From: Octopus bimaculoides
Lineage: Eukaryota
Length of the DNA stretch: 63,714 bases
Assembly: GCF_001194135.2 (NCBI RefSeq)
Contig: NC_068988.1
Span: forward strand, 41,729,418-41,793,131
Reading direction: 5' to 3'
The notes beneath the pieces are model-generated. The model was not told the DNA's origin. It saw only the letters and a list, made by a program, of their open reading frames with translations, and searched no databases. Of this stretch, positions 9,569 through 36,999 are shown one piece after another. Positions within the stretch are counted from its first letter, which is position 1. Every line of letters begins with the position of its first letter. A program made the position numbers and the translations under genes.

Positions 9569-9624
9569 TGATGGTTTTGATCGATCGCAGATGCTTTAGC
9601 ATCTGCGGTCGATCAAAACCATCA
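9569..9624. repeat. 26-bp near-perfect hairpin with 4-nt loop
   Basis: TGATGGTTTTGATCGATCGCAGATGC-TTTA-GCATCTGCGGTCGATCAAAACCATCA; one T/G position, a wobble pair in + strand RNA. Confidence 0.9.
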
Positions 9625-11455: not shown

Positions 11456-11825
11456 GATTTGGAATTTCCTTCTTCATTTTTTGATTAGAAAATATGGCAG
11501 TATATTCTTCTAAATAGCATTTAAACGCAAGAAATATCGTTATTCTATCGGAATATTTCTGTTGTTAATATAACAGTCCATTGTAAGATCTTTTCTAATG
11601 CTATTTAGATTTACCAACAAAAGTTGTCTGCATTCATTCTTTTCCCATTTTATTTATACCATTCTACACATAAAGCGTATACCTCTCTTAGAATTTTTCA
11701 AAGTTTGTCGTCCGTTAATATCAACACCTTACATTTTATTTTAAATGTACGAGGTAAATTTGTGATCGGTGATAAATATATATGTGTTTGTGTGTACGTG
11801 TTTCTATGTCCGTGTGTGTGTGTGT

Positions 11826-11871
<46 letters not shown>

Positions 11872-12649: not shown

Positions 12650-12694
12650 TTCTCACTACTCGAGTCTCATGCCACAGTGATCATCAGACGGGAA
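12650..12694 (-). ncRNA. Decayed minimal hammerhead-like motif (Penelope-like terminal repeat remnant)
   Basis: Minus strand TTCCCGT-CTGATGA-TCACTGTGGCAT-GAGA-C-TCGA-GTA-GTGAGAA. Core, palindromic stem-III loop and GUA triplet are present, but GAAA is GAGA and stem II does not pair. Confidence 0.35.
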
Positions 12695-14379: not shown

Positions 14380-14580
14380 TACTTTCATATTGACTCTTGT
14401 GGTCTATACTCAGGAAGATTCTAGAGAGTGTGTTTAGTTCTGCTGCTGAGCTACTAGAGGGACAATATGAGGATAGATTCAGGGCTTCATCAAGTCCTAC
14501 TTTGGCACGGAGATACAGATTTTGGAGGATGGGTGAGTGGATTTCTCTGGTGGATATTTTATCGACCCTGCTAATATGAA
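14380..14580 (-). mobile_element. LINE APE-type endonuclease fragment
   Basis: Minus strand reads ...ILQNLYLRAKVGLDEALNLSSYCPSSSSAAELNTLSRIFLSIDH, resembling the YxPPSS segment of APE domains. Confidence 0.4.
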
Positions 14581-16355: not shown

Positions 16356-16386
<31 letters not shown>

Positions 16387-16539
16387 ATATATATATTTAT
16401 ATATATGTGCATGTGTGTGTATATATATGCTGGTGAATAGTATTAGAGTGTAGACCACCAAGTGATCAAATCAATCCTATCAATTGATTGTTGTTAAGAA
16501 CACAACACAACGTCATAAACATTTGGAGCTAGCATTGGA

Positions 16540-17085
16540 GAGTAGAAGGGAAGGTGCAAAGGAAGGGGTGTTAGTTGGAGTGTAGTGAAGTGTTGGAGTG
16601 AACCGAGGCAAGGACGTGGCTGATACGAAAGAAATAACACAACGCTAGAGTAATGAAGTAATAATAGTAAAGACTTGGTGAAGGCGGTTTGAGAGAGTTG
16701 GAATATAGAAGCAAATACGGGGAGTGATGAGCCTGATATGACAACTTCAAGTGTGATTAGATGAAGAGAGGTCGCATTTAGGGTTGCCTTGCTGTTGGGG
16801 GTGGTAGCGTGAAATGAGGCTGTACTAAGTGGTGAGTCTGACAGAGAGAAAGTGGTGATATGTAGTGAGGCAGTGTTGAGAAAGGTCTTGTAGTGCTGGA
16901 GTGATGGAGTGACGTAATATAGTGGAGGAGAATTTGAGTGAGATAAGGCAGTTTCAGAAAGGTAAAGTGGAGTGAGGGGTAGCTGGAGTAAAGTGTGTCT
17001 ATACTGCGGTGGTGGACAGAATTCAGGCAGTTCTGGATTGGTGGATTAAAGCATGGCTACGATAGAATAGTGGAGTAAAAATATG
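16540..17085. repeat. Degenerate strand-biased purine/G-rich cryptic satellite
   Basis: C-poor + strand with about 7 TGGAGT copies and many AGTG/GTGA words. Confidence 0.55.
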
Positions 17086-17419
17086 TATATTCTATGATAG
17101 AGGTGTCTGTGTGCGTGCGTGTGTGTGTGTGTGCGAATGAAAATGGTGAAGCGAATATTTGTTCTAGCTTTCCAAACCCACTGATCCATGAGAACTGCTT
17201 CAGAACATCAAAGACATTCCAGTCGATATGTTTGCAGAAGGTTTCTGATGTTAGCCTCTATTCCACAAATATAAACATACGCATATATACATACACACAA
17301 TTATAAAAGCGTACAAGCAATAACATGTGTACACGCCAACATATACATGTGTGTGTATCTGCGTGTGTGTATGTGCGTATTTCTGTATGCTTACAAATCT
17401 CTGTCTAATCCTGTGTGAG

Positions 17420-17496
<77 letters not shown>

Positions 17497-17742
17497 ATAT
17501 ATATATTTACATGTATGTATGTATGTATAAACATGTACGTATAGACATGGGCATATCTCTCAACGGGTACACATACATACACATGCACACACAGAGATAT
17601 ATAATTAACATAATTTGCTACATAATTGTTTTATTGTTTTAATAAGTGAAATACATATTTATCGACATTTAGGTCCACACAGAGAAAAACACACGCGCGC
17701 GCACACACACACACACACTAGCGGGTATACATATGTAAATAA

Positions 17743-17778
<36 letters not shown>

Positions 17779-18276
17779 AGGAAAGGAAAGGAAAGGAAGG
17801 AAGGAAAGAAACTGGATGCTTTTCTCAGCATACTTTTTGCACTGTTATTAATTTCACGCACCGGAAGTTTTTGGAAGCATGTGTAGGCCACAGACTTTAA
17901 AAAAGTAGATGTAGTTATTACCGTAACCGTGTTGGCTACGGTTTCACACGCATCGGCAACGATGAAGTTTGAACACTATCGTGGCGTCCTTGTTCGTGAT
18001 GGTAGGTGATACGGACAGAGTTGCTTTAATTGTGTGAAAACAATGAATCGGAGACAATGTGCCTTCCTGTAAAGACAGTGGGGGTTAGAGGTTTCGTAGG
18101 AACAAGGATTCACTGAGCGCTCAGACGTCTTGGACAAACTGCGAAGATGAAAAATGGTGCTTAGTTAAAGTACCATAAAAGCATGAATCTATTAGTAGCT
18201 CTTTTGGTTATGTAGTAAATAGAAATTTATTACTCACTGGATTGAGTACTTTTTCTTGAATTTACTTATACTCTGG

Positions 18277-18334
<58 letters not shown>

Positions 18335-18680
18335 GTCTGTCTGTCTAAATACCAGTGTACTACACAAGCACCTGCTTCGCTAAAAATAGAAGTCAAAGAC
18401 TTCTAAGCCACAGAAGATTCACAAAATTAATACAGGTATGATAGGAAGAAAAAAAAAATTAGTAAACAAGAATAGCGTCCTACCTCCGTCAAGGATGCAT
18501 AATTTCGAATTTAGCGCCAAAGGATCCTGAATTTCATCAGTCAAATCTGCTTGGGACGACTACCAGAATTTGCCCCAACGATGCCTGTAAATTCATTTGA
18601 GTGGTCGAACACCATTGAAACAAACGAATTCAATGAAATTACTTATAAATAAATATAAGAACGATACTGTTCTTAAAGAT

Positions 18681-18909
18681 AATATCGTTGGTGGCCGCAA
18701 GAGTACAGCCGTATAGGCAAATTATGCCTGTATTAATTTTGTGCTTCTTCTGTAGCTCAGAAGTATTTTGACTTCTATTTTTAGCGAAGCATATGCTTCT
18801 GTAGTACCCTCACACACCCACACACACATATATATATATTATATATTTATATTAGATATATTTATTAATTTGTTTATATGGCTGTACGCTCGCGGCTACC
18901 AACGATATT
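18681..18909. mobile_element. MITE-like element with 34-bp terminal inverted repeats
   Basis: 18681-18714 AATATCGTTGGTGGCCGCAAGAGTACAGCCGTAT versus 18876-18909; 30/34 identical after reverse-complementing. Confidence 0.65.
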
Positions 18910-18980
18910 ATTTTTGGGGGATATTATCGTTGCCCTTTATTTAAATATAAACGAATATATATATATATATACATATATCA

Positions 18981-19025
18981 CGGCGGTGCATCAGCATGGC
19001 CGCAGCTCTAAGCTGAAATTATAAA
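18981..19025 (+). mobile_element. Isolated 3' tail shared by the CR1-group LINE and family-B SINE
   Basis: GGCGGTGCATCAGCATGGCCGCAGCTCTAAGCTGAAA matches the reverse complement of the tail at 26897-26935. Confidence 0.7.
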
Positions 19026-19258
19026 CAAACAAACATATATATTCGAAAACGGAAAGTTTATATAATTTTTAAAAAAAACGTATTGTAAATAAACAAACGA
19101 ACATATATTAAACACACAGATTAACAGAAAATACAGAAGGTCACCAACTCCTCATCAGTTATCTGCCAGAGGGTCAAACGCAATTTCGGCCATTTTCGAT
19201 ATTATTGCTTCCCCATACATATATACATACATACATACATACATACATACATAAACAC

Positions 19259-19293
<35 letters not shown>

Positions 19294-19302
19294 ATGTGTA
19301 TG

Positions 19303-19333
<31 letters not shown>

Positions 19334-19529
19334 ATATATATATATATTGTGTGTGTGTGTATGTGTGTACACACGTTTATGAACATCTACACCCGCACAC
19401 ATAAACACTCATATATATATATTCATGTATACACATGCACGCACACATATAAATAATATATGCGCACACACGCACGCATACACACCCACACATACACACA
19501 GATATACATCTATGAGAGACAGTCCCACT

Positions 19530-19690
19530 ATTTCGTTGTAAGGTAATCCAGACGTTCGATCTAATGGACGACTTACTGATTGAATTAGCATTCGAAGTGG
19601 TTGAGTATTCCCAGGACTAATGTATCCTTCACCTAACTCTCAGAGAGATCAAGGCTGGACCTTCGAATTACAGGTAGAAACAATCTGACA
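19530..19690 (-). mobile_element. Degenerate family-C SINE 3' half
   Basis: Contains CCAGACGTTCGATC...GGTTGAGTATTCC...AAGGCTGGACCTTCGAATTACAGGTA, similar to the copies at 46403 and 49005. Confidence 0.55.
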
Positions 19691-21559
19691 GTTTTCTACT
19701 CAGTTTCTCTTATATCTATGTTACACAAAGCTCAAAAGCGCTTGTCGGAGATGCTCTGGTGTGCGATTGATCCTGAGATGTCATAAGTGTAAAACAAATT
19801 TCTTAACCACTCAGCAACGACTGCATCAAGTTATGTATGTGTGTGCATGTGTGTGAGTGAGTGTGTGAGAGTGTGTGTGTCTGAATATGTGCGTGTGTAT
19901 GTGTGCAGGTACATGCAGGTACATATGTATATTATTATATTTAACATACATTAATGCAGGCCTATATACACATAAACGCAAATTCGTACATGTACACAAC
20001 AATGTATATATTACATAAATATATGCACGAATATGTATAGAAATGCATCTCCTTATATACTCTTGATTGCCAATATCTGCCACAACCACCAACACCACCA
20101 CTATCATCACCACCACTGCTATTTCTAGCATCACCTGTATCACTACCACCATGTTGACGACCAAGAACTTCTAATGATGCCGCCACCACTATCAGACATA
20201 AAATAAAAAACTAGCTAAAAAGTAATGGAAGAATTTAAACTAAGTAAAAATATAGATCAACAACCGTAATGTCTCAAAAAAAATTAATACAAAAATACAA
20301 CTGCCTCCTCCTCTCCATAAAGAAATTACAATGGCTGGTTTACCGGAAATGAAAAGTTGAACGGAAATGGCTAGATTTAATGATAGTTGGACTAAAATGA
20401 ATGATGTATAAAATCACATCACATCACACAAACACACAAACACACACAGACGTGCATACATCCATTCACATGGATCCATGTTTGCATGTGTGTATGTATG
20501 CCTGAATGTAAGTATGTATGTATGTTTGTATGTATCTTTCTATATACCTATGTGTGTATTTTATGGCAAGAGATAATGGTCGTAGATTGGTTTCGTTAAG
20601 TCCTTACACAGCAGGAGCGCTCCAATCGATGAATTTCACAGGATAAAACGACAGAAATGCAGACAACAAACCGGCGATGAAAGGATCGTATCCTATGTCA
20701 CCGTAGACAACAGTTATTTCTGATTTAGTGGAATTTTAAAATGCTAATTTTCATATCATGTCATTTTCTTCGTAGATAATGTCAGGATATTACAGCGTGT
20801 ATATATATATATATATATATATNNNNNNNNNNNNNNNNNNNNNNNNNNNNNNNNNNNNNNNNNNNNNNNNNNNNNNNNNNNNNNNNNNNNNNNNNNNNNN
20901 NNNNNNNNNNNNNNNNNNNNNNNNNNNNNNNNNNNNNNNNNNNNNNNNNNNNNNNNNNNNNNNNNNNNNNNNNNNNNNNNNNNNNNNNNNNNNNNNNNNN
21001 NNNNNNNNNNNNNNNNNNNNNNNNNNNNNNNNNNNNNNNNNNNNNNNNNNNNNNNNNNNNNNNNNNNNNNNNNNNNNNNNNNNNNNNNNNNNNNNNNNNN
21101 NNNNNNNNNNNNNNNNNNNNNNNNNNNNNNNNNNNNNNNNNNNNNNNNNNNNNNNNNNNNNNNNNNNNNNNNNNNNNNNNNNNNNNNNNNNNNNNNNNNN
21201 NNNNNNNNNNNNNNNNNNNNNNNNNNNNNNNNNNNNNNNNNNNNNNNNNNNNNNNNNNNNNNNNNNNNNNNNNNNNNNNNNNNNNNNNNNNNNNNNNNNN
21301 NNNNNNNNNNNNNNNNNNNNNNNNNNNNNNNNNNNNNNNNNNNNNNNNNNNNNNNNNNNNNNNNNNNNNNNNNNNNNNNNNNNNNNNNNNNNNNNNNNNN
21401 NNNNNNNNNNNNNNNNNNNNNNNNNNNNNNNNNNNNNNNNNNNNNNNNNNNNNNNNNNNNNNNNNNNNNNNNNNNNNNNNNNNNNNNNNNNNNNNNNNNN
21501 NNNNNNNNNNNNNATATACATACATACATACATATATCTGTGTGTACGTATGTATGGGT

Positions 21560-21740
21560 GTAATAGGGAGAATTCACAAGAAAAAACAAAAGACGAAGAC
21601 AGGTGGTGAAGAAAACAAACAAATGTATTAGTATAACGCTCGGGAATTGAAAAAGTCTTTAACGTTTCGAGCCTATGCTCTTCCACAGAAAGGAACTCAG
21701 AAAGAAACAAGCAGAGAAACAAGCAGAGAAAAAATGTGTG
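21560..21740 (-). mobile_element. Penelope-like terminal-repeat-type element, copy 1
   Basis: Closely similar to 29741-29915 (GGGAGAATT...GACAGGTGGTG...GTATTAGT.TAACGCTCGGGAA...AAGTCTTTAACGTTTCGAGC); carries a hammerhead-like motif. PLE assignment is inferred from that motif. Confidence 0.6.
21656..21693 (-). ncRNA. Minimal type-I hammerhead ribozyme-like motif (core CUGUGGA)
   Basis: Minus strand CCTTT-CTGTGGA-A-GAGC-ATAG-GCTC-GAAA-C-GT-T-AAAGA. Confidence 0.5.
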
Positions 21741-22024
21741 TAGTGGTTAGCGATCTATCATGGTGAACGCCGGACAGAAGGGTCACACAGGAGAGTTAAG
21801 AAGAAGAGGAGATAACAAAGTAGTAGTGATCCCAAAACGAAGGTGCGTGTGCGTGTAAGAGAGTACGTATGTGCGTGTAAAAGAGGGCTGGTGATCTTGA
21901 CGTGTACGTGTGTGTATGTGTATGTGTACGTGTGTGTATGTGAAAATGTGGGGATGGGAATTGGTCAGTGCTGGTGTGTGCGTGGTGGTGTGTTGTGATG
22001 TGATGTGTTGTGTGGTATAGTGTA

Positions 22025-22085
<61 letters not shown>

Positions 22086-22249
22086 TATACATATAAATAT
22101 ATTGACCGACAGACCGACAGGATTTCACTGGCATAGCAAAAGTGGTGTGAGGGATCTATGGATCACGGGGCACAAAGTGCTATCTGCGTCTGTGTGTAAA
22201 TATTTTTACCCTTTTGATGGTTTTCAGCATTAGACTGCAACCATACCGG

Positions 22250-22790
22250 ATAACTATGTTCAAGACTGTAGTCAACGAAATCTGTCCACTGCGCTTCATT
22301 GACTTCTTGAGCGGCGAACTGGACCTGGACAGTCATGAATCACTATTTCACACAGTATGCGATCACATATGCCATTTTGAGGCACATTTATATCTGAAAA
22401 TAGCATTATTCGACATTGCACCCATATTATAAGGTTGATCTGGCCCAAGGTGAGGACAGACAGAAAATGAAAAGTCCAGGAGGCAACGGATACAGTAAAG
22501 GAAAGCCTTACTATCAGAGAAATAATGGGACACACTCAGGTCAATAAGCATGGTCTGGGCGTAACAAAAATGGAAAGATGGTCAGAGACCAAGGAAAGAT
22601 AAGTAAAGGTCTGATTTTAGAAAAGGAAGAAGATGCAATACGAATCCTGAAGATAGTACAGTAGAGCCAACAGGACCAGTGGATGGCGTGGGAAGGTGCA
22701 CTCCAGAAGTGTCTCAGCTGGATCGACCTGTGGCATATGGCACTTCTGAGAATACCTTTTATCTTCAGATCTGAGTTTCTAACCACTACA
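22250..22790 (+). mobile_element. HERO-like (RLE-type) non-LTR retrotransposon fragment
   Basis: WPKVRTDRK*KVQEATDTVKESLTIREIMGHTQVNKHGLG, then in another frame KIVQ*SQQDQWMAWEGALQKCLSWIDLWHM. Matches the recalled TGRKW...GxVQxGRxGLG and QQGxWxxWE...SWxDLW motifs. Confidence 0.75.
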
Positions 22791-24339
22791 CAGGGCTTTA
22801 AAGCAACACATCACTAACAAGTCATTGTCAGTAACTATATAACTGATAGTTACTTTCAGTACTTCAGTGAAAGACATTAAATATAAAATAAACCACTTAA
22901 TATATTATCAACAAGTAGCAACTTCTAGCATATACAAATACAGAATTTGAATCAATCAGAGACAGGCATTAAAGGTGAGTTAAGTGCATGGCTGGTACAC
23001 CAAAATATAATAATATAAAGATTGACAGTTGCCGTCATAAGAATTTTATAAGTTTCGAGACAACATGAAATAATTCTGTTTTGGAAGAGTGGATCCCGAA
23101 GCACATAAAACTCTAAATAATGGCATGTAAATACTGGGTTCAAAAACCCCTTTTGTATTAATTCGAAGGTTGACTGGGACATGAACCCACATATCCTATT
23201 ATGATATTAGTTACGTCTACAGGAGGTGTGGAATCGTGTTACATAGGCAAACTTCGAATTTTTTTTATCTAATGGATTTTTCAACCCAAAATTTACATGT
23301 TATTATTCATACCTTTAAGTGCTTCGAGATCCAGTTCTCCAAAAAAGAAATATTAACTGCTGAATCGAGAGAAAATGAATAACAGATTTGAGCGAAATAG
23401 TTGTTTTTCGTTAAAAAATTCCCAGTATTTCAATGACAAAACTCCATATTATCTTTGCCGTAATTACATTGCTATTAACAAAAGCTGGTGATATAAATAA
23501 GTGTCAGCATTCCATTTTTGTAAGATTCTATATGAGAATACAGAGCGTGAAATCTTTATGGGAGTTCTTCGTATGAATATTCAATTGCATTGATTTTTTC
23601 TTCAACAGTGATTACCGTAAGAATGAGGTTTAGAATAATAGCATAATGCAAACTACTTTTTACAAATGCAGCCAATGCATATGGAAGTATTCGCACATAC
23701 ATGCATACATACATACATGCATACATACATACATACATACATACACACACACATACATACATACATACATACACACACACACATACATACATACATACAT
23801 ACATATATTTATATATATAGCTAATATGCATAATGCGTATTTTGTGTATAAGAAAATGTATAAAACACATATAGATATATAAAAGCACATATACATCACA
23901 CACACAATCACATACAAATGAATTTATGAATATGTATATGCATAAACACATACATGCTTTCGTATATATATGATTGCTTAAGAAGATAACTGAGGAGGTA
24001 GAGAGGTAGGAGTAGAAAGCTGGAGAAAAATGATGAGAGATAAAAAAAAGGAAGGAGGAGGAAAAGCAGGAATAAAAGACAGGGAATAGTCGAAAAAGTC
24101 GAAGAGAAATGTGAAAAGAAAGGCAGAGAAAGACAGAAAGACAGAAAGCGAGAAAAGAGCGAGTAGGAAGTGCCGGAGAAAGGGGGAGCGATGAAGGAAG
24201 AAAGAGATGGAGAAAGCGGGGGGGGTGCCATGAAGGAAGAAAGAGAAGGAAAAAGACAAGAATTGCAGAGAAGAACGGAAAAACAGGTGGCTTTACTTGG
24301 AGAAACACAAAAGGCGTGTGCACTAATACTTTAATAGGG

Positions 24340-24720
24340 GCATATAAGACCGATGGTGTCGTTTTCCAGCATCCGAGTATGAATTTTCTTTCACCTATAC
24401 AAAGGGTGCATTGCTCTGTTTTTCTGTGGAGGTGCTTGTTTCCCACGATTTTGTTAGAATTACGCTTCAGTTTACTGTGCAGAGCCTTCATTTCTGACTT
24501 GCGTTCTTCTATAGTCTGCGATTCTTCAGCTGTTATCACAGTCTGTACCAATTTTCTTTTAATTGTTTGATGTAGCTTACAAGTTTAGTAGTATTCCGTT
24601 TTTTGATGTTTCTAAATGAGTCGTGGTCGAAATAACTTCAGTTAAAGGGTCATTCAGTCAATCCCGTGTATGATTTTAAGTTGGTGTTCATGTTTTCACC
24701 CACAGATTTGACTTATTTCT
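24340..24720 (-). mobile_element. Penelope-like element GIY-YIG endonuclease / C-terminal fragment
   Basis: Minus strand KSYTGLTE*PFN*SYFDHDSFRNIKKRNTTKLVSYIKQLKE, then QCTLCIGERKFIL (cf. YIGLTExxFKxRxxxH...SFR...TxLSxYIWxLK and CxLCxxEKxxI). Confidence 0.75.
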
Positions 24721-26229
24721 CTTAAATAATTTCCTCTGCGTTACAGGCTACATTCAGCAGACATACGGTGGTGTTCCTGAATGAATGAGCTACAATTCTA
24801 AAGAACGTTTGGCAGAGGACAGAAGCTCTCTGAGGATTGATGCTGCCATAAGTGTTTTTTCTTTTTTCTCCTGTCATCTACCATTATTCTTAGTAGGTAA
24901 ATCTATCAGCAAGTGATGGACTTCGGGTGAAATTTTTCATGTTTCCTGAGATGAGGAGCATTTAACCATCTACTTTTAGACAATTGTGGTTGAAGGCAAC
25001 GTTCATTTCTTCATTAACTCCAATTGAGAACCTAGATAACTCTCTATCTAACTAGAGTCTAAAAAACATATACTGATTGTTCATTTCTACATTGGCGTAT
25101 TCAGAAGATCCAGTAGGTATTATTGAGCAGGTATTCTATGATTTCGCATTCATTCTCTTATGGACTAACCGCACATGGTCTCCTCATGCATCTAAAATAC
25201 AATTCTAGTTTCAAGTACTAAATAACATGACTTTCCCTGAAAAGGTACTGAACGTACTAATACAATCCTGGTGTCCTGACCCACTCGAGGCGCAGACAAT
25301 CGTTCGTTTACATCTGTTTACATCAAGTACCATGGATACACAAAACGAGTAGAGATTACAGGGACAAATTTATAAAAACGCAATATATAAAAACTGAGTA
25401 CGAGAAACAAGACATGAAAATATCACAGTGTAAATGGAAGTGAAAATAGTCGTTCCAACATGGAGACAATTACCTGAAACCATCACGGAACCATCATGGA
25501 ACTTTACAGTTCCCAAATTGATCTAATGGCTAAAATTATGCGCCCTCTAAAAGGTGTGTTTGACCTCTGTGTACGCAGTGAGCAGGCCAATTCTGTGAGG
25601 TCACATAAGGTGCTCTTTCCAATATTTCAAAAAAATTACAGGACGACAGAAGTTTCCTTTCTACCCACATTTTCTGTTCCAAATCGAAATGAAGTGGAAG
25701 AAAGGAAAAAGAGAAGAGAAAAAAAGGGAGAGGAAGGCCAAAAGTAATAAAAATAAAAACAACTGTATTAATGATGAAGAAGATGACAAAGATGAAGATG
25801 ATAATAATGATGATGATGGTGAGGATAATTGGCACAACTATTGGGCGTTAAAAGGGTTACCGTCTAAATATATTTATTATCCGACAAAGTAGCAACACCC
25901 GATACACAAATATAAACTTGCCAAATTTCGTGTTATGAAAAGTCCTAATCGAAACGCATAGACACACATAGATACACTCCACACAGAGAGAGGGGAGAGA
26001 GAGAGAGAGAGATGCCAACACATATAAGCGCACAAAAACACACACACACTGGTACACATACAAACACGGAAAGGTAAATACGCGCCCATATACACACGCG
26101 TACGCATGTATATATGTGGAGATATAAATATGGAAAATATATATAGATATATAGATATATAAGAGAAACAATATTGGACCAAAGATGGAAATAAACAAGA
26201 TACATATGTGTATGTATATGTCGGCGTGG

Positions 26230-26275
<46 letters not shown>

Positions 26276-26874
26276 CATATATAAAATGTTGTGGATATAT
26301 ATCAGTTGTATGTATATTATGCACACACACCTCTCTGTGTGTGAAGATTATTGCGAATAAGGTTACAAAAAACAAAACAATATTGCTTCATCATCACTAT
26401 CATCATCATTATTAATTTTCTATATTTCCATCTTTTTTACATATATTATACTAATATATTTTTGTTATGTATTATTCACATTATTATTTTTTTTTTTTGT
26501 TTAAGATTAGGCTTTTTTGTTTTTACTTTCGCTTTGGCTTTTCGTGTATTTGGTCTTGTTTCATTCACACTAAGTGCAAAGACTAGTGCAGCTGTCAATA
26601 AAATGTTATTGCTTTATATATGGAACATATGGAATTATTTATAGAACGTAAAGGTGCGTTCACTGAGGCTGGTCAAAGAGGCGTTAATGCCCGATATGGT
26701 TTATCATGTTTACATTTTTTAATAATATCAATTTGATCAAACGATATATTCTCTGTTCTGCCGCCTGCCTGGAGCAAGGTGATACTATTCATCAAAACAG
26801 AAATGCTTATATATATATATATATATATATNNNNNNNNNNNNNNNNNNNNNNNNNNNNNNNNNNNNATATATAA

Positions 26875-27600
26875 TTATTTGATTTGATTTGATCTAGTTT
26901 CAGCTCGTGAGCTGTGGCCATGCTGGGGCACCGCCATTTGGTGTTGATACATAATTTTACTTCACTAATTCATTTTAGAAATTGACATTTGGTGCATGAG
27001 TGAGTTTAATGCTGCTGCCCTCATCTGCACCTCCTACTGTGAAGTTGGTTCATCTGGGACACTTCACAGTAAGAGATCTAGTTTCGTTTTGAAAACACCT
27101 ACATCCACCCCATGCAGGTCTCTCATGTACTTCGGGAGGATATTAAAGAGCTGTGGTCCCCCAAAGTCCAGGCTGTTGCAATATCTTATCCTATACCTTG
27201 ATGGCAAATTTGGAGTCCTTGGTACAATGCAGGGGCGCCCTGTTCTAGTGTTAGTGAAACTCTCGATGCCAAAGTTTTGGACAAGTCCCTCCAGAATCTT
27301 CCAGATGTATATTATGGCATATCTTTCTCACCTACGCTCTAAGGAGTAGATTTTTAATCTCTTGGGTCTTTCCCAGTAGCTTATATGCTGCAAAGGGGAT
27401 ATCTTTTCGTGTAGCTTCGTTGGATTGTCTCAAGATCTATAATTAATTTGAAACTGGTTGGTGACAATAGCCGGGAGTAATAGTCAAAGTGGCTTAGGGC
27501 AAATGTCCTCAAGAGGACTATCATGGTTTACCGATCTCTTGTTCTAAAAGTTCTAAGAATCCATCCGGTTAGCCGCCGGCATTTCATTGCGAACATAGCA
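26875..27600 (-). mobile_element. CR1/L2-group LINE 3' end with tail and (ATCAA)n terminus
   Basis: Minus strand: GWILRTFRTR, YWERPKRLKIYSLERR*ERYAIIYIWKILEGLV, GPQLFNILP, VFKTKLDLLL*SVPDEP; tail GGCGGTGCCCCAGCATGGCCACAGC...GAAACTAGATCAAATCAAATC. Confidence 0.9.
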
Positions 27601-27751
27601 ACATGAACATGGAATAATGCATCATATTACTCATGTAAATGCCTAGGTTTTGCATTGTCTCTGGGAATGCAATCCCTCCATGTCCGATGTATTTAATTGG
27701 TATTGGATTTAGTTTTGCATGCTGGTAGCACAAGTCTATTGATACATACAT

Positions 27752-27825
<74 letters not shown>

Positions 27826-27827
<2 letters not shown>

Positions 27828-27896
27828 GAGATGAAGACAGGTGAATAAACAACAAGCAGGTGTATTAGTTTGACGCTCGAGAAAGTGAGAAAGTCT
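27826..27896 (-). mobile_element. Third, truncated copy of the hammerhead-bearing repeat (no ribozyme part)
   Basis: GATGAAGACAGGTG...GTATTAGTTTGACGCTCGAGAAAGTGAGAAAGTCT aligns to 21594-21658 and 29770-29836, then similarity stops. Confidence 0.65.
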
Positions 27897-28054
27897 AATT
27901 GCAGTAGCGAATACTAATATATGTGCGTGTAAATAGGTAAAGGAGGGAAGGGAAAAAAAATAAAGAGTGTCCAACGCAAAAGAAAAATCAGATAGGACGA
28001 ATAGAAAAAAAGAGAGAACCAGGAAGCAAGAGACTTGCACATAGCTTTAATTTT

Positions 28055-28372
28055 TTATTATTTATCTTTTACGTGCTTCAGTTATTAGACTGTGGCCATT
28101 CTGGGGTACCATCTTGAAACACTTTTAGTCGAATGAATCGGCCTCAGTGTCTATTTTATGTTAAGCATGGTACTTATTCTGTAGAATTCTCTTGCCGAAC
28201 TGCTAGCTTTCAGGAGCGTTAACACACCAACACCGGTTGCTAAGCGGTGATGGGGACAAACACAGACACAAAGACACACACATAGATATATACATACACG
28301 CGCACACACACACGCACACACACACGCACACACACACGCACACACATACACACACACACGTACATGCGTACG

Positions 28373-28453
<81 letters not shown>

Positions 28454-28635
28454 GTGTGTGTGTATATGTACGACGGTTTCTTTCAGTTTCCTCCTACCAA
28501 ATCCACTCATAAAGCTTTGGTTCGTCCGAGACTATAGCAGAAGACACTTGCCCTGTATGCCATGCAATGGGACTGAACCCTGGACTATGTGGTCGGGAAG
28601 CAAGTTTCTTACCACACAGTTATGCCTGCACCTAT
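28055..28635 (-). mobile_element. Near full-length family-B SINE with expanded internal (CA)/(TA)/(TG) microsatellite
   Basis: tRNA-like head at ~28560-28630, body, and LINE-like tail GACTGTGGCCATTCTGGGGTACC at ~28088. Confidence 0.85.
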
Positions 28636-29174
28636 CAATATATCTATAGTAACAACTGCACATATGTCATTTTTCATTTTTCCACTTCCATATTTTCAAT
28701 TTCTCCTTGATGTTATGGATCTAGGAAATTGTAAGCTTAAATGCTGTATAAATAATCTACTAGAAAGAGCAGCCAAATATCAACTAGTCTTTACAAAATA
28801 CATTTACTCATTTTAAAATATTGTATTTGAAACTTATAAAAGTCCCTATGATGATAAATCGAGAAACTCTACGTATAAACACCAATTTATTTCTCTCTTT
28901 AGTAGTCTACCTAGCAGATAGCCTCCACACCAAACAAAAGGGGTGGTCACGGTTGGGATCCCTTTCATCATAGATTTGATATATAAGGGTTCACTATAAC
29001 ATCTGCATGAAACGTATATACACATTTATTATATGCAACCTACATAAGTCATCCTCAGCATATACAAAATCCGATATCATAGCTGAATTGGTTATTTTTA
29101 ATACGTACTAATGACTGTGTGCGAGTGTCAGTATCACTTGTATAGGTGTATACATGTATATGTGTGTGTGTATA

Positions 29175-29218
<44 letters not shown>

Positions 29219-29613
29219 CACACACGTATGTACACGCACACGCATATCTCCATATACCCTTATATGCATCACATATACAGATACATCTCTTTCCCCCTTT
29301 GTCTGCCTCTCTCTCATACATGAATATAGAGATTAGATATTTTCTGCATGTCTATACACGTCTATATATGTATTTTTTTTTTCATCTATGGATCCATATA
29401 TTCACCATTTTTCTTTCTATTTGCATAAGCGTATAATTATAGGCACTGTTCAGAGCGCTTTTGCGTGTCTACGTGTTTTTTTTTAAAATTCTTAATTGTT
29501 TGTTGTTGTTGTTTTGTTCTTGTCTGTATAGTTATTTGGTAAGTAGAATTATTTGCTTGTGTGCAAACTCAATCTTGTCACATTGTATATTATCTGTATG
29601 TGTATGTGAGTGT

Positions 29614-29681
<68 letters not shown>

Positions 29682-29740
29682 NNNNNNNNNNNNNNNNNNN
29701 NNNNNNNNNNNNNNNNNNNNNNNNNNNTATATATATATAT

Positions 29741-29915
29741 GGGAGAATTTACGAAAAAAAACAACAACAGACGAGGACAGGTGGTGTAAACAACAAAAGG
29801 ATGTATTAGTTTAACGCTCGGGAATAGAGAAAGTCTTTAACGTTTCGAGCTACGCTCTTCAACAGAAAGAATAACGAGAAAACAAGGAGAAAAACACGGA
29901 GAAAAAAAATTGAAT
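29741..29915 (-). mobile_element. Penelope-like terminal-repeat-type element, copy 2
   Basis: Paralog of 21560-21740. Confidence 0.6.
29834..29870 (-). ncRNA. Minimal type-I hammerhead ribozyme-like motif (core CUGUUGA)
   Basis: Minus strand TCTTT-CTGTTGA-A-GAGC-GTA-GCTC-GAAA-C-GT-T-AAAGA: 5-bp stem I, 4-bp stem II, palindromic ACGT stem III. Confidence 0.55.
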
Positions 29916-29926
29916 GTTGTGGTCAG

Positions 29927-29961
<35 letters not shown>

Positions 29962-30531
29962 CACACATTCTGACACACACATATATGGGAGAGATAAATT
30001 GGTGAGTAGAATTTTATAGGCACCTATGGACAATATCTGGTGGGCGTATTTTGGCTACAATAGATCCCACGCACAAACACGCGCGCACGCACACACACAG
30101 GCACATATGTACACGCACACATGCAAAAACTCACACACATTCACGCACACACACATGTAAGTATTCAGACGGCTTTATATGCATGTATGTTCATTTATGT
30201 ATGTATGTATTATGTACATATGTATACATACATATATCTATTTATTTGAGTATTTGTGTATACTCGTAAAAATGCTCGTATGTTGAGGTATCCATGTTTG
30301 GATTCCCGACAACTCCACTTACTTCTGTATCAGCAGCAAGCCTGTGCTCAGCTGGGTGTGTCCCTTGGATTGTGTTGAAATAAAAAAGAGAATGTGATAT
30401 AGAATCGAGCGTTGATCAAAGAATTCTTAATTAATAATATTGGCATAAGGTTTAATTGGGGTGATAACAGAAAACAAAACAAGATAAAGATAGCTGTGGA
30501 GATGCTGCAACCGTTGGTAATGATTGAGATG

Positions 30532-30578
<47 letters not shown>

Positions 30579-30609
30579 AGTGGTGGTNNNNNNNNNNCGT
30601 GATGTAGAT

Positions 30610-30900
30610 TAGGCCCTCCGTCGCTTACGATGACGAGTGTTCCAGTTGATCCGATCGACGGAAGGGCCTGCTCGTGAAAGTGATTGAACACTTCACAGAC
30701 ACGTTTGCTGGGTCAAGAGAGATTCAGCGTGACACGGAATGTTACGAGAGTGGCCCTTTGAATGTTTGCCAGCTGAGTGAACTGGAGCAACATGAAATAA
30801 ACTCTCTTGCTCAAGGACACAACGTACCACCGGGGATCGAACTCACGACCTTACGATCGCGAGCCGACTGTCCCTAACCACTAAGCCACGCGTCTTCACT
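30610..30900 (-). mobile_element. tRNA-derived SINE, family C
   Basis: Minus head GTGAAGACGCGTGGCTTAGTGGTTAGGG...GAGTTCGATCCCCGG; 3' end ...ACTGGAACACTCGTCATCGTAAGCGACGGAG followed by (ACC)/(AAC) repeats. Confidence 0.85.
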
Positions 30901-30902
30901 CG

Positions 30903-31230
30903 TGATGAAGACAATAATCATACTGATGATGATGATGATGATAATGATGATGACGACGACGACGACGACGATGATTATGATGATGGTGTTGATGATGTTG
31001 ATGATGATGATGATGATGACAGATATGTTTGTTGTATTTCTGGTTGAGATTATGATGATAATCATGATGATGATTGTATTGATGACGACGACAAATATAA
31101 AACTGCTGCTGCTGCTATTGTGGTGTTACTTCTGCTGATAATAACGATTATTGTGTTGAGGATGGATACGTTGATGACGACGACGACGATGACTATGATG
31201 ATGAGGATGATGATGATATTGCGTCTATCT
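30903..31230. repeat. Imperfect (GAT/GAC)n trinucleotide region
   Basis: Direct. Confidence 0.85.
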
Positions 31231-31446
31231 TATGATAATAATGATATCGGCATTTTTAACAAACAAGCCCATAAGCATGTAGAAGCCGCAAGTGTTTGGC
31301 AATGTGATGTGATGACAGTCATGCATATCGCTAGGCCAAGTAGTCTCAACCCACCGAAACGATGTCGAACTCAAAAAGTCAAAAGGTTTATTTAAAGAGA
31401 AAAGGGAAAACAATGAAATCCTCGTATGTTTTCTGGAAAAAAAAAC

Positions 31447-31572
31447 AGAAGAAGAAGAAGAAGAAGAAGNNNNNNNNNNGAAGAAGAAGAAGAAGAAGAA
31501 GAAGAAGAAGAAGAAGAAGAAGAAGAAGAAGAAGAAGAAGAAGAAGAAGAAAAAGAAGAAGAAGAAGAAGAA
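31447..31572. repeat. (GAA)n microsatellite spanning a small gap
   Basis: Direct. Confidence 0.95.
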
Positions 31573-32339
31573 AAAAGGATGGAGGAAGGGAAGAGGGAGG
31601 AGGAGAGTTGCAAGAGAATGGAAGGAAGCGTTGCAGTTTTCGTTGTTCAAATAAACAGACTTCAATGTCAGATTAATTTTAACAAAGATCACTGAACGAA
31701 TATTTGATACATTTTAACCTAGATCGCACTATTTCATCCAAAGTTGGAATAAAAGCTACATCTGAACATTATTTAAGCAATACATATTTCTCCCCTAGTC
31801 AATATGTAATATTTAGCAACCAATATGTGTTGCTAACTACAGTTGTGGCAACATTAGTTACAATAACGCAAAAACAAAAACAAAAAAAAGATTTTGCACC
31901 CTGAAATTATTTCCAAACATGAAAGGAAATTTTTAAAATATGTAATTACCATACAAGCAGAGTCTTATGCTTAGTCACTTGCGTTTGCAAATTAGAATTC
32001 ACTCACACATACTCATAGGCGCGCACGCACACACATACATTCACACACAACAATGTTGGAACTATTAATTTGAATAGCAACAAAGAATAAACATCACGAT
32101 CAGTGACGATAGCACCAACACCAGTAATAAATATTCTATCTATAACAGGCATTGTTGATAAAAGGGAGTGAAAAGATTCGAACCATTTAAAGAATTTGAA
32201 AGGGAATGAAGGAGGTATGTGGTAGAGCATTATGCTTTCCTGCGCCATAAATTTGTCCAAAAATTGTGAGAAAACAATTTTGTACGGTTATTTTTTGCTT
32301 TATTTTTGTGAATATTATGTAATAGTTACTTCTTTGTAG

Positions 32340-32452
32340 TGTTTAGAGAAGCGGGTGGTTCTTCCTGAAGAACCAGAATCATGTGAAGAGATAGTGCAAC
32401 TAGAGCGACATAACCGTCATGGGGCTGGTACCGCAGAGGGAAAGTCACAAGA
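32340..32452 (+). other. Candidate 113-nt internal exon, or part of a decayed LTR-retrotransposon protease region
   Basis: TTACTTCTTTGTAG acceptor (32338-39), open frame CLEKRVVLPEEPESCEEIVQLERHNRHGAGTAEGKSQ, donor AGA|GTAAGC (32453). The same frame continues *ADSGSQ, resembling an aspartic-protease DSG motif. Confidence 0.3.
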
Positions 32453-33791
32453 GTAAGCGGATTCTGGATCACAAGCAGAAATATTTTCACAAGTATTGAT
32501 ACCTGGCTTTTTGCCACGTTAGCGAAAATACAGACATGGGATGAGCATGGAGGTGATTCGTAACAACACGCAGTCGGTTTCAGACTGCATAATGTACAGG
32601 TCCTAATAAGTTCCAAAGACCACTACACCATATTCTGTAAGGCATCAGAAATAAAGAACGACAATCGAACTGGAAATGCAAGGCAATATGAACTGTTGCT
32701 AGACATGTGGCAGAACTTGCTATTTGAGTGTCATTTTTCGTAGATCGACAAAAAACACTTAGAAGTAAAAAAAGGGACAGCAGATAACTGAAAGAACAGT
32801 AATAGCAATATCCCCCATTATGCTCCAGGGACGAAGACTATGGGTGCTGCTTGTGTTGAGTGAAAAGGAGGGGTGAACAAGAAAGAGATTGGTGCTTGAT
32901 AAACTGTTAAGTATTGATCCATTCATCAAGTAATGGTGTAATCTTCCGGTTCAATAGCTACCTACTGAAGTGACTAAATTTGGTCGCAGATTGTGAGAGT
33001 GCATGCTGGTGTGTGTATGTGCGTGTGTGTCTGCGCGCGTGTGTATATACATATATGTATATATGTATGTATGTATGTATATANNNNNNNNNNNNNNNNN
33101 NNNNNNNNNNNNNNNNNNNNNNNNNNNNNNNNNNNNNNNNNNNNNNNNNNNNNNNNNNNNNNNNNNNNNNNNNNNNNNNNNNNNNNNNNNNNNNNNNNNN
33201 NNNNNNNNNNNNNNNNNNNNNNNNNNNNNNNNNNNNNNNNNNNNNNNNNNNNNNNNNNNNNNNNNNNNNNNNNNNNNNNNNNNNNNNNNNNNNNNNNNNN
33301 NNNNNNNNNNNNNNNNNNNNNNNNNNNNNNNNNNNNNNNNNNNNNNNNNNNNNNNNNNNNNNNNNNNNNNNNNNNNNNNNNNNNNNNNNNNNNNNNNNNN
33401 NNNNNNNNNNNNNNNNNNNNNNNNNNNNNNNNNNNNNNNNNNNNNNNNNNNNNNNNNNNNNNNNNNNNNNNNNNNNNNNNNNNNNNNNNNNNNNNNNNNN
33501 NNNNNNNNNNNNNNNNNNNNNNNNNNNNNNNNNNNNNNNNNNNNNNNNNNNNNNNNNNNNNNNNNNNNNNNNNNNNNNNNNNNNNNNNNNNNNNNNNNNN
33601 NNNNNNNNNNNNNNNNNNNNNNNNNNNNNNNNNNNNNNNNNNNNNNNNNNNNNNNNNNNNNNNNNNNNNNNNNNNNNNNNNNNNNNNNNNNNNNNNNNNN
33701 NNNNNNNNNNNNNNNNNNNNNNNNNNNNNNNNNNNNNNNNNNNNNNNNNNNNNNNNNNNNNNNNNNNNNNNNNNNNNNNNNNNNNNNNNNN

Positions 33792-33853
<62 letters not shown>

Positions 33854-34081
33854 CGTGCACGCGTATGAGTGAATGTATTTATTAATACACAACTTGCCGA
33901 TTGACTTGTCAATATACATTACCATCTGGATGAAAGCCTTAATCAGCAGTTTTGCCTGTTCTTCTCTCTTTTCACACAATGTCAGCGTACTCAGGTGGAA
34001 CTAATACCTCTTGGGAGGAGAGAAAACAAAGCAGTGCGATATACAATCTATATAGCAATAAGTATTCCTGTTTGTTCTCGG

Positions 34082-34122
<41 letters not shown>

Positions 34123-34185
34123 TGAATACGTTGACGTCAAAATTTAAAAAGTGAAAATAATACTGACATTTCATTTTAACAGTAT

Positions 34186-34240
<55 letters not shown>

Positions 34241-34242
<2 letters not shown>

Positions 34243-35209
34243 AGAATTACATAGAAATGACTTGAAATACTAAAGACGAAATTTATTCAGTAAAATCGCT
34301 ATTGGCTTCAACCACGGCTTCCGGACGACTTCGGAAACTGCTGCAACTCCTCTGGACGGTCCCCTCGTTTAAGTTGGTGAATGCTGACATAATCCTTGCC
34401 TTCAGTTCATCTTTGGTGTTACAAAGAGCTTTGTAGATCTCTCACTCAACTGCGCCCGCACATAAGAATGAAGGAGCTCGCAGTGTGAGTAGTTAGGTGG
34501 CCAGATGATAGGAGTAATGTGGTCTCACAAATTGTCTGACAGCCGTGACTGAGTCCTCCTGCTCGTGTGGGATGGTGCAGAGTCCTGTTGTCAGACGTAA
34601 GGTCTTCCAGCAGCTACCCTCTTGACCCAGAACAGTACTACCTCCTCCAGGCGCTAGATGTAGGCCTCCGTCTTGAGTCTGAGGCCGTGTGGGAAGATGA
34701 ATGGAGGCATAATGTCGCCATCATTGGCGATCACTCCAAACACCATGATGTTGGTTGAATGTTTGATTTTTATGATTCTCGGTATTTTGGGGATACGGCA
34801 AGCCAACAGTTGTTCTGTATGTTTATCATCTGACCCTCGCAGAATTTTTTCTCGTTTGAGAAAAACAAAAGAATGTTCAGTTTGAGGGGATGCTTGCGTT
34901 TGTTCAAAAGCGTCGTAGCGCGGTCTTTCCTCTTGTCCCTGGTGCCTTGGGATAAAAACTGGTCCTTTCTCATCTTGTATGATGAATACCGGATGTCTTC
35001 ATGCACTACCTACCTAATAAGAAACTCAGATACTCCCATGTCCCTCGCGATAGACCTGATTAACTTAGAGGGATCGTTGTTAATAACGACCTGGATCTCA
35101 CTAACAAATTAAGGAGTTCTTTTCTTATCAGAACGATCAGAGTGAGTTTTCCGAGCTACCATTTTGTATTGAAAATATAAAATGGCGATAATTTATCCAT
35201 CGCACCCTG
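34241..35209 (-). mobile_element. Degenerate Tc1/mariner transposon, DD37D (maT)-like transposase
   Basis: Minus strand begins TA|CAGGGTGCGATGGATAAATTATCGCC. Peptides IRSIARDMGVS, FFSNEKKF, IMVFGVI, QQDSAPSHTS, WPPNYSHCELLHSY; 37 residues separate the D of QDS from the expected third D. Left TIR not seen (a TA run sits there). Confidence 0.88.
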
Positions 35210-35222
35210 TATATATAAATAA

Positions 35223-35274
<52 letters not shown>

Positions 35275-35304
35275 GTAAGTATGTATGTATATATGTAGTT
35301 AAAT

Positions 35305-35680
35305 ACACATATTCTTTTATTCTTTTACTTGTTTCACAGCGGCTATGTTGGAGCACCACCTTGTAGGGTTTGTGTTCTTATTTTTTAAGCCTAGTACTTA
35401 TTCTATCCATATCTAATGCCGAACCACTACGTTACGGGGACGTAAATACACCAACAACGCTTGTCAAGCGCTGATGGGAGACAAACACAGACACAAGTAC
35501 ATGCACACACACACACACACACACACATACGCCGGGCTACTTTCAGTTTCCGTCTACCAAATCCACTCAACGCTTTGGTCGGTCCGATACTATAGAAGAA
35601 GACACATACCCAGTGGGACTGAAAATGGAACTTTGTGGTTGGGGGGCAAGCTTCTTACTACATAGCCACACCTGCACCTA
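35305..35680 (-). mobile_element. Family-B SINE
   Basis: TTTCAGTTTCCGTCTACCAAATCCACTC...CAGTGGGACTGAA...GCCACACCTGC, as in the other B copies. Confidence 0.85.
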
Positions 35681-36819
35681 TGTATGTATGCATATACACA
35701 TGTGTGTGGTCTGTATGTGTGCGTTTGTCCGTGTGTTTATGTGTGTGTAAATACATATACATGTATGCATTTAATTATACACATGTATATATATATAAAT
35801 ATATATATATGCATACATATATATATATGTGTGTGTGCGTGTGTATACGTATGTATGTTCATATATATATGTGTGTGAGTTTATGTGTATGAATAAAAGT
35901 TCTTTCTTAGAGGTATATACTATATTAATAACAGAAACATTAGGCGTTGGTAATGTGAATATCTTCATTTATTCAAATCATAAATAAATAAGATAGAATT
36001 ATGGTAGAATCTGCCTTTGTGCGTTAATCTTTGTCTCTGCTACAGAACAGAATGGTCACATCCTTTTATATTTTGTTGTGCAGTAGCTTGTTATAGGTTG
36101 GCCATCAAGCCTATGTGGTAACTTAATTTTTTTTTGTGAGCTGAAATCTTTGAGTTAAAGAATTTTGTGTTAACAGATTTTTTTTAAAAAACTATGTCTT
36201 TGACTACGTGTCTCTATTTGGTTTTGTTTCAACGTTCGTTGAAGTCACCGCCAGTAGTTGTTTAACACATTTAACTTTTCAAATATATTTGCTATAAAGG
36301 CAAAAATACTAGAGGCTAATATAAACTGGATAAGCCAATTTGCAGTTTTAACAATTACTTGCAGCGAGATTGACCAGCAAACTACTGTGTAAGCAGTGTT
36401 TTGTTTCATTGCTGCAATGCAGTACAGGACATATTTACAGATTTAATACTGTGAGTTACAACTAATGTAAACAGTGCGTCTACAAAATGTTCGTGGGCAG
36501 AAATAGAGAACTGATGTACATACATTTCGACCCTTGTTGGTGTCATCGTCAGTAACTGAGCACGACCCTCAACTAGCCACAAGCACATCGCTTATAAGCC
36601 CGCATATATTAATGTTCGACCTCGCTACCATTATAACACAACGTGGTGTATAATATACGGTAAGCTTGACGACTGGATTTTTAGCTTCAAATTCCTCTGA
36701 AACATTTACCTGCGATAGGCATACTTCCTATCCAAGGTGACATTATATTTTTAAACATTTGAATGGAGAACATTAAATTGAAAAAAGAAGTAATTCAATG
36801 ACTTTGAATAATTTATTTG

Positions 36820-36868
36820 TACTAAATGTTTTAATGTTCTTTTTCTTCTCTTTCTATTTTAGGTAAGT
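36820..36868 (+). other. Candidate recursive splice site (3'SS immediately followed by 5'SS)
   Basis: TACTAAA branch-like motif at 36820-26, tract TTTTAATGTTCTTTTTCTTCTCTTTCTATTTT, AG at 36861-62, then GTAAGT at 36863-68. Confidence 0.6.
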
Positions 36869-36999
36869 TATATGCTTTTGTCTAAATACGATTCTGCGCT
36901 GCTGAGAATGGGAATAGACAACTAAATGATGAAATCATGTACTATAAAAAAGGAAGAAAATCAAGCAGGTATTTTCACGACGATCATCATTGTTATGTC

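What the first reader, a model, noticed from the sequence alone, without database searches (positions are those of the whole stretch)
36820..36975. Recursive-splicing-like zero-length exon #2, 36.2 kb from #1 on the same strand
Seen: TACTAAA ~37 nt upstream, a ~30-nt U-rich tract, and TAG joined to a perfect GTAAGT (36862/36863). A downstream donor CAG|GTATTT at 36968/36969 would define a 106-nt cryptic exon. In my by-eye scan, this and 625/626 are the only strong tract+AG|GTAAG fusions; both are + strand, and I saw no equally strong minus-strand example. Established: tens-of-kb spacing is typical of ratchet points in Drosophila long introns. Inference: a giant intron removed stepwise, which would extend recursive splicing to cephalopods.
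Basis: partly seen in the sequence, partly recalled or inferred. Interest (0 to 1): 0.8.

Follow-up and report, generated by a model that had tools for sequence, protein, structure and literature searches.

The report
Two candidate recursive splice sites
The window holds two same-strand sequences, 36 kb apart, that look like the "ratchet points" flies use to remove giant introns in steps; they are rarer than chance predicts, but nothing here shows that the region is transcribed.

Summary
At 36862/36863 a 33-nt U-rich tract ending in TAG abuts GTAAGT. TACTAAA lies 37-38 nt upstream and CAG|GTATTT lies 106 nt downstream. With CAG|GTAAGA at 625/626, these are the only strong tract+AG|GTAAG fusions on either strand.

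Chance expects 0.02-0.07 such sites per window. P(two or more) is about 0.003 or lower.

Both sites carry further hallmarks of Drosophila ratchet points:
- TT at -5/-6.
- A branch-point candidate at -29.
- A long AG-free zone upstream.
- A weaker downstream donor that defines a frame-shifting cryptic exon.
- Spacing inside the fly range.

The interpretation remains untested. I found no exon, gene, RNA family or orthologous sequence, so transcription, strand, conservation and the cephalopod origin are all unverified.

Best reading: genuine recursive-splicing sites in a long + strand intron, confidence about 0.45. Chance, unused motifs are the main rival, at about 0.33.

If real, this is a new member of a known kind, because recursive splicing is established in insects and vertebrates. 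Interest is moderate.

The parts
36820..36826 (+). TACTAAA, distal branch-point candidate for site #2 (A at 36825 = position -38)
   Evidence: Read directly. It lies just outside the -36 to -21 range of mapped fly ratchet-point branch points.
36831..36835 (+). TTAAT, proximal branch-point candidate (yUnAy; A at 36834 = position -29)
   Evidence: Read directly. It matches the -30 peak reported for fly ratchet points. This is inference, not mapped.
36828..36860 (+). U-rich polypyrimidine tract of site #2 (23 T, 5 C, 3 A, 2 G); TT at -5/-6
   Evidence: The AG-free stretch upstream of the acceptor AG is 70 nt.
36861..36868 (+). Candidate ratchet point #2: AG|GTAAGT, junction 36862/36863
   Evidence: Acceptor score 12.1 and donor score 10.3 on the rough PWM.
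36863..36968 (+). Putative cryptic recursive-splicing exon, 106 nt (3n+1), stops in all three frames, purine-rich 3' end (AAAAAAGGAAGAAAATCAAGCAG)
   Evidence: Its role as an exon is inferred.
36966..36974 (+). Weaker downstream donor CAG|GTATTT (score 5.2 against 10.3 for the ratchet donor)
   Evidence: Donors scoring 5 or more occur once per 271 nt, so this is weak evidence.
507..623 (+). (TC)n microsatellite followed by the pyrimidine tract of site #1; CTAAAT at 594-599 (A597 = -29); TT at -5/-6
   Evidence: The AG-free stretch upstream is 217 nt.
624..631 (+). Candidate ratchet point #1: AG|GTAAGA, junction 625/626
   Evidence: Acceptor score 13.2 and donor score 11.1. GTAAGA is the donor of the Ubx recursive microexons.
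626..659 (+). Putative cryptic recursive-splicing exon of site #1, 34 nt (3n+1), ended by ACG|GTAAAT (score 6.0)
   Evidence: Inferred.
626..36862 (+). Intron segment that would be removed in one recursive step (36,237 nt); no exon detected in it
   Evidence: The length lies within the 2.6-63.6 kb range of fly segments.

Best explanation
The two sites are recursive splice sites (ratchet points) inside one very long intron of a + strand gene whose exons lie outside the window.

Proposed mechanism:
1. As the intron is transcribed, U2AF and U2 recognise the long U-rich tract and the AG at 625. They are probably helped by exon definition through the weak donor 34 nt downstream.
2. The upstream exon is spliced to position 626. 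This rebuilds a strong donor, exon|GTAAGA.
3. That donor outcompetes the weak downstream donor. The upstream exon is then re-spliced to 36863, removing a 36.2-kb lariat whose branch lies near 36834 or 36825.
4. Exon|GTAAGT is regenerated and used again toward the next ratchet point or the true downstream exon.
5. No trace is left in the mRNA. The 34-nt and 106-nt cryptic exons are normally skipped, and they would break the reading frame if included.

Shown here: the motifs, their rarity, their shared strand and their fly-like details. Inferred: transcription, use of the sites, order of the steps and the host gene.
For: - The two sites are the only strong composite acceptor/donor sites on either strand.
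- Two are found against 0.02 expected. P(two or more) is about 0.003 by resampling, and 1 of 300 Markov simulations reached two.
- Both have TT at -5/-6, as do 99.5% of fly ratchet points against 44% of ordinary fly introns.
- Both have a branch-point-like A at -29, where the fly peak is -30.
- The AG-free zones upstream are 217 and 70 nt. Only about 3% of AGs have 70 nt or more.
- The ratchet donors score 11.1 and 10.3, against 6.0 and 5.2 for the downstream donors. Both cryptic exons are 3n+1 in length, and the 106-nt one has stops in all frames. This matches the splice-donor competition model with out-of-frame cryptic exons.
- The 36.2-kb spacing lies within the fly segment range.
- The two loci are not copies of one repeat.
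- No coding exon was detected between or around them.
Against: - There is no evidence of transcription or of a host gene on either strand.
- No orthologous sequence was available, so the strongest hallmark of real ratchet points, conservation, is untested.
- AATAAA shows no sense/antisense asymmetry (75 against 74).
- Site #1 sits just downstream of a (TC)n microsatellite, which makes a pyrimidine tract there cheap.
- The downstream donors are of a quality that occurs every 271 nt.
- With n = 2 and a motif chosen by eye, about 0.3% of windows would show such a pair by chance. That is on the order of a hundred windows in a gigabase-scale genome.
- The PWMs were approximate and written from general knowledge, not trained on this species.
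Confidence: 0.45

Rival explanations
1. Chance motifs that are never used. The window is AT-rich, microsatellite-laden, non-coding DNA, either intergenic or intronic. Two composite AG|GTAAG sites arose by drift, one of them beside a (TC)n array.
For: - No exon, gene or RNA family was found.
- Poly(A) signals show no strand asymmetry.
- The combined-score null gives P of about 0.003 per window, not vanishingly small across a whole genome.
- Relaxing the pattern to GTRAG with 2 mismatches adds no further sites, and 23 of 100 shuffles then reach 2 matches.
- About 100 microsatellite arrays supply many pyrimidine tracts.
Against: - Both of the only two + strand AGs with a tract of at least 90% Y are followed by GTAAG.
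- The sites share a strand.
- Both also have TT at -5/-6, a -29 branch-point candidate and a long AG-free zone.
- The stricter pattern gave 0 of 100 shuffles with two matches.
Confidence: 0.33
2. Ordinary exon edges rather than zero-length exons. On this reading 36863-36968 and 626-659 are real, sometimes-included non-coding, UTR or poison cassette exons, or exons of a long non-coding RNA, that happen to begin with GTAAG. Alternatively, the GTAAGT is the donor of a non-coding exon that ends in the U-rich tract.
For: - Each site has a usable downstream donor.
- The 106-nt interval ends in a purine-rich, enhancer-like stretch.
- Expressed recursive-splicing exons exist in flies and are the commoner class in mammals.
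Against: - An exon starting with GTAAG is expected about once per thousand, since 7 of 6,486 AGs are followed by it. Two in one window is unlikely unless the donor is functional.
- All three frames of the 106-nt interval are closed.
- The region upstream of 36862 is not an open frame either.
Confidence: 0.17
3. Sequence carried by a transposable element or other repeat family, whose consensus happens to contain a tract followed by AGGTAAG.
For: The window is littered with repeats. Its SINE-like element itself carries an acceptor-like ...TTCATCTTTTCAG|G.
Against: Both loci are single-copy within the window and are not similar to each other beyond the motif. Six-frame translations around both sites hit nothing in the protein collection.
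Confidence: 0.05

Closest known systems
Drosophila intronic ratchet points (zero-nucleotide exons; Ubx, kuz, luna, Antp; Hatton 1998, Burnette 2005, Duff 2015, Pai 2018, Joseph 2018/2021)
   Same: - Consensus (Y)n NCAG|GTAAGT with an unusually prominent pyrimidine tract.
- TT at -5/-6.
- Branch point near -30.
- Ratchet donor stronger than the donor of a short, out-of-frame cryptic exon.
- Several sites per intron on the sense strand, tens of kb apart.
   Different: - No RNA evidence, no conservation data and no known host gene here.
- The proposed cryptic exon of site #2 is 106 nt, against about 50 nt typical in flies.
- Site #2 has T rather than C at -3.
- The organism is presumably a mollusc, a lineage in which recursive splicing has not been reported.
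Vertebrate recursive-splicing exons in long neuronal genes (Sibley 2015; Blazquez 2018, as summarised in PMC8605326)
   Same: - An acceptor is followed at once by a reconstitutable donor.
- A downstream donor defines a recursive-splicing exon that carries premature stops.
- The choice between the donors is made by competition.
   Different: In vertebrates most such exons are expressed, and only about nine fully suppressed intronic sites are well established. The motif is not enriched on the sense strand of vertebrate long introns. Here the pyrimidine tract and GTAAG core look more like the fly type.
Zero-length exon of the rat tropomyosin pseudo-exon (Grellscheid & Smith 2006, cited in PMC2773006)
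   Same: The same juxtaposed acceptor/donor architecture.
   Different: That element is thought to purge a pseudo-exon, not to subdivide a long intron. Here the 36-kb spacing and the paired sites suggest subdivision.

Membership tests
Drosophila-type intronic ratchet point | [quoted passage not shown] | tested here: met
   The two sites rank first and second of 333 AGGT sites on both strands.
Drosophila-type intronic ratchet point | TT dinucleotide at -5/-6 and a prominent pyrimidine tract (99.5% of fly ratchet points) | tested here: met
   The feature was defined in flies, and its relevance to other phyla is unknown.
Drosophila-type intronic ratchet point | Location on the sense strand inside a long (>10 kb) intron of a transcribed gene | tested here: inconclusive
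   No exon or gene was found on either strand. This fits either a giant intron or intergenic DNA. No annotation or RNA data were available.
Drosophila-type intronic ratchet point | Splice-junction reads from the upstream exon to the site, saw-tooth nascent RNA coverage, and lariats to and from the site | not testable with these tools
   No transcriptome data were reachable.
Drosophila-type intronic ratchet point | Evolutionary conservation of the core and flanks above that of control AGGT sites | not testable with these tools
   No related genomic sequence was found: protein-space search of the flanks and a metagenome scan for the 24-mer.
Drosophila-type intronic ratchet point | Short cryptic exon ended by a weaker donor, usually out of frame or carrying stops | tested here: met
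   exons of 34 nt and 106 nt, both 3n+1, with donors scoring 6.0 and 5.2 against 11.1 and 10.3. This is weak evidence, because such donors occur once per 271 nt.
Drosophila-type intronic ratchet point | Sense over antisense excess of the motif | tested here: inconclusive
   Two sites on + and none on - within the window. The sample is far too small, and a genome-wide count is needed.
Drosophila-type intronic ratchet point | Segment length in the known range (2.6-63.6 kb; mean 18 kb) | tested here: met
   36,237 nt.
Vertebrate-type expressed recursive-splicing exon | The exon is detectably included in some mRNAs, with inclusion governed by the exon junction complex or donor competition | not testable with these tools
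   No RNA data. All frames of the 106-nt interval are closed, so it could only be a poison or non-coding exon.

The most novel reading that the evidence does not exclude
The two sites are constitutive ratchet points of an intron longer than 63 kb in a cephalopod gene. That would be the first recursive splicing seen in a mollusc or any lophotrochozoan. It would imply that fly-type zero-length-exon splicing of giant introns dates back to the bilaterian ancestor and was kept in a lineage known for long neuronal genes.
Probability: 0.4. Interest if true: 0.6.

Novelty: new member of a known kind. Interest (0 to 1): 0.4.

Why it matters
Recursive splicing is documented experimentally in Drosophila and vertebrates. 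Motif enrichment has been shown for a few other insects and a sea urchin. I found no report for molluscs.

Cephalopods have very large genes and unusual RNA biology. A confirmed pair of ratchet points would show how they handle giant introns and would widen the known phylogenetic range of the mechanism.

The claim can be checked cheaply with existing ribosomal-RNA-depleted RNA-seq and related genomes. The mechanism itself would not be new.

Tried and rejected
1. Orthologue hunting in protein space. Six-frame ORFs around both sites, joined into one 2,330-aa query, gave no hit.
2. Exon hunting. ORFs of at least 40-45 aa on both strands gave nothing against Pfam. ORFs of at least 46 aa on + and on - gave nothing against the 5.8-billion-protein collection. 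These negatives exclude only near-identical annotated proteins and long domain-bearing exons. Even ORFs that look transposon-like by eye gave no hits, so sensitivity to diverged sequence was poor.
3. Splice-site-flanked open frames. None looked convincingly coding.
4. Rfam and tRNA scans found nothing. This also rules out a minus-strand U1-like gene behind the ACTTACCT complement.
5. A metagenome scan for the 24-mer spanning 36863 gave 0 hits.
6. Strand-asymmetry proxies for transcription were uninformative: AATAAA 75 against 74, CpG observed/expected about 0.8 throughout, and SINE orientation.
7. The repeat-family explanation was rejected, because both loci are unique in the window and unrelated to each other.
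8. I did not use the single exhaustive representative-protein search. It accepts only 1,200 aa, and short exons would not reach significance.

Full report
**What is there.** The + strand at 36820-36975 reads TACTAAA, then TG, then a 33-nt tract (23 T, 5 C, 3 A, 2 G) ending in TAG, followed directly by GTAAGT. The junction is at 36862/36863. CAG|GTATTT lies 106 nt further on, with its junction at 36968/36969. The companion site is CAG|GTAAGA at 625/626, preceded by a T-rich tract and, further upstream, a (TC)n microsatellite. Every coordinate in the finding is correct.

**Is it unusual?** AGGTAAG occurs four times on + and three times on -. Only the two named sites have at least 90% pyrimidines in the 20 nt upstream. 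Seen the other way, only two of the 3,372 AG dinucleotides on the + strand have such a tract, and both are followed by GTAAG. None of the five such AGs on the - strand is followed by GT.

I scored acceptor and donor together with an approximate PWM built from general metazoan consensus frequencies, not trained on this species. The two sites score 24.3 and 22.4. The next + site scores 13.6 and the best - site 18.8.

- The tool's own control for Y12-AGGTAAG with at most 1 mismatch found 2 matches against 0.02 expected. None of 100 dinucleotide shuffles reached 2.
- The less tuned combined score gives 0.07 expected sites per window under independence resampling, with P(two or more) = 0.003. One of 300 third-order Markov simulations had two or more.
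- Loosening the pattern adds no further sites.

The pair is therefore improbable for a single window. It is not impossible across a gigabase genome, where roughly 0.3% of windows would show one.

**Not a repeat.** The 1.2 kb around site #2 and the 0.9 kb around site #1 are single-copy in the window and do not match each other.

**Comparison with real ratchet points.** Duff et al. (bioRxiv 10.1101/006163) report the following:
- 197 fly ratchet points lie in introns of 11-133 kb.
- The segments removed are 2.6-63.6 kb long, with a mean of 18 kb.
- Branch points lie mostly at -36 to -21, with a peak at -30.
- TT occurs at -5/-6 in 99.5% of ratchet points, against 44% of ordinary introns.

Joseph & Lai (PMC8605326) summarise that ratchet points need a short cryptic exon of about 50 nt. 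It is ended by a donor that is usually weaker than the ratchet donor, and it is generally out of frame or stop-containing.

The two sites here compare as follows:
- Both have TT at -5/-6.
- Both have a branch-point-like A at -29: TTAAT at 36831-36835 and CTAAA at 594-598.
- The AG-free stretch upstream is 70 nt for site #2 and 217 nt for site #1. Only about 3% of AGs in the window have 70 nt or more.
- The downstream donors score 6.0 (ACG|GTAAAT, 34 nt from 626) and 5.2 (CAG|GTATTT, 106 nt from 36863). The ratchet donors score 11.1 and 10.3.
- Both intervals are 3n+1 in length. The 106-nt one has stops in all three frames and a purine-rich 3' end.
- The segment between the sites is 36,237 nt, inside the fly range.

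One caution applies. Donors scoring 5 or more occur once per 271 nt. Finding one downstream of each site has a chance probability of roughly 8% jointly, so it carries little weight.

**Context.** I could not establish that the window is genic.
- Six-frame ORFs of at least 40-45 aa gave no Pfam match on either strand.
- ORFs of at least 46 aa gave no hit in the large protein collection on + or -, and neither did all ORFs around the two sites.
- Open frames flanked by splice-site-like motifs do not look coding.
- No Rfam family or tRNA is present.
- AATAAA counts are 75 on + and 74 on -, and CpG observed/expected is flat near 0.8.

The window consists of about 35% GC DNA with some 100 microsatellite arrays, 13 assembly gaps and SINE-like repeats. 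This fits the interior of a giant intron and fits intergenic DNA equally well. The protein searches could detect only near-identical annotated proteins, because even ORFs that look transposon-like by eye gave nothing. Short exons cannot be excluded.

**Conservation.** This is the best discriminator between real and spurious ratchet points in flies. It could not be tested, because no related sequence was reachable.

**Verdict.** The recursive-splicing reading is the best single explanation, at about 0.45. Two independent, same-strand, top-scoring composite sites that share several secondary hallmarks are hard to obtain otherwise. The mechanism is already known in insects and vertebrates, and the motif is enriched in other invertebrates. 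Unused chance motifs (about 0.33) and ordinary non-coding or poison exon edges (about 0.17) remain live rivals, and a repeat-borne origin is unlikely (about 0.05).

I found no report of recursive splicing in cephalopods or octopus. If real, the pair would be a new member of a known kind. The claim can be settled quickly with annotation, total RNA-seq and a cross-species alignment.

Noticed in passing
62728-63225; also 10633-10926, 11295-11400, 50189-50500 (+) and 5796-5915 (-): A roughly 185-bp SINE-like element with a tRNA-like B-box (GAGTTCAAATACCGCC) occurs as a tandem pair plus scattered copies. Nine of ten fragments are in + orientation. The element carries an acceptor-like TTCATCTTTTCAG|G that ranks among the top + strand acceptor scores. 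ARAGORN and Rfam do not call it.
   Followed up: partly
36913-36942, minus strand: A strong acceptor-like site on the minus strand (TTGATTTTCTTCCTTTTTTATAG|TAC, score 12.0). It is the reverse complement of the purine-rich end of the putative 106-nt exon. No good minus-strand donor follows it.
   Followed up: partly
46467/46466 and 60875/60874, minus strand: The best antisense AG|GT composites are CACAG|GTAGGT (score 18.8) and CACAG|GTGAGA (score 17.4). Both have mediocre pyrimidine tracts and are at about the level that simulated sequence reaches (mean maximum 18.5).
   Followed up: yes
47880-48122 (-), 34804-34998 (-), 27067-27327 (-), 52449-52862 (+): Decayed ORFs that look by eye like a mariner/Tc1 transposase C-terminus (WPSRSPDL...) and LINE ORF2 tails. 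The only Pfam signal is a weak C2H2 zinc-finger hit (E = 0.0026), and the protein collection gave no hit, so the assignment rests on resemblance only.
   Followed up: partly
whole window; gaps at 11872-11928, 13116-13390, 16017-16311, 20823-21513, 33084-33791, 52884-53279, 61053-61281, 61817-62557 and five shorter ones: Thirteen runs of N (3,504 bases in all). Nearly all are bordered by TA, TG or CA microsatellites, as expected where a short-read assembly breaks in simple repeats. An exon hidden in a gap cannot be excluded.
   Followed up: no
whole window: GTGAGT is twice as frequent on + (23) as on - (11), whereas GTAAGT (12 against 14) and AATAAA (75 against 74) are balanced. This probably reflects the orientation of TG-rich microsatellites rather than selection.
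   Followed up: no
2687-2771: A (GAT)28 array that reads as a roughly 30-residue poly-His run on the minus strand. It is simple-repeat translation, not a gene.
   Followed up: no
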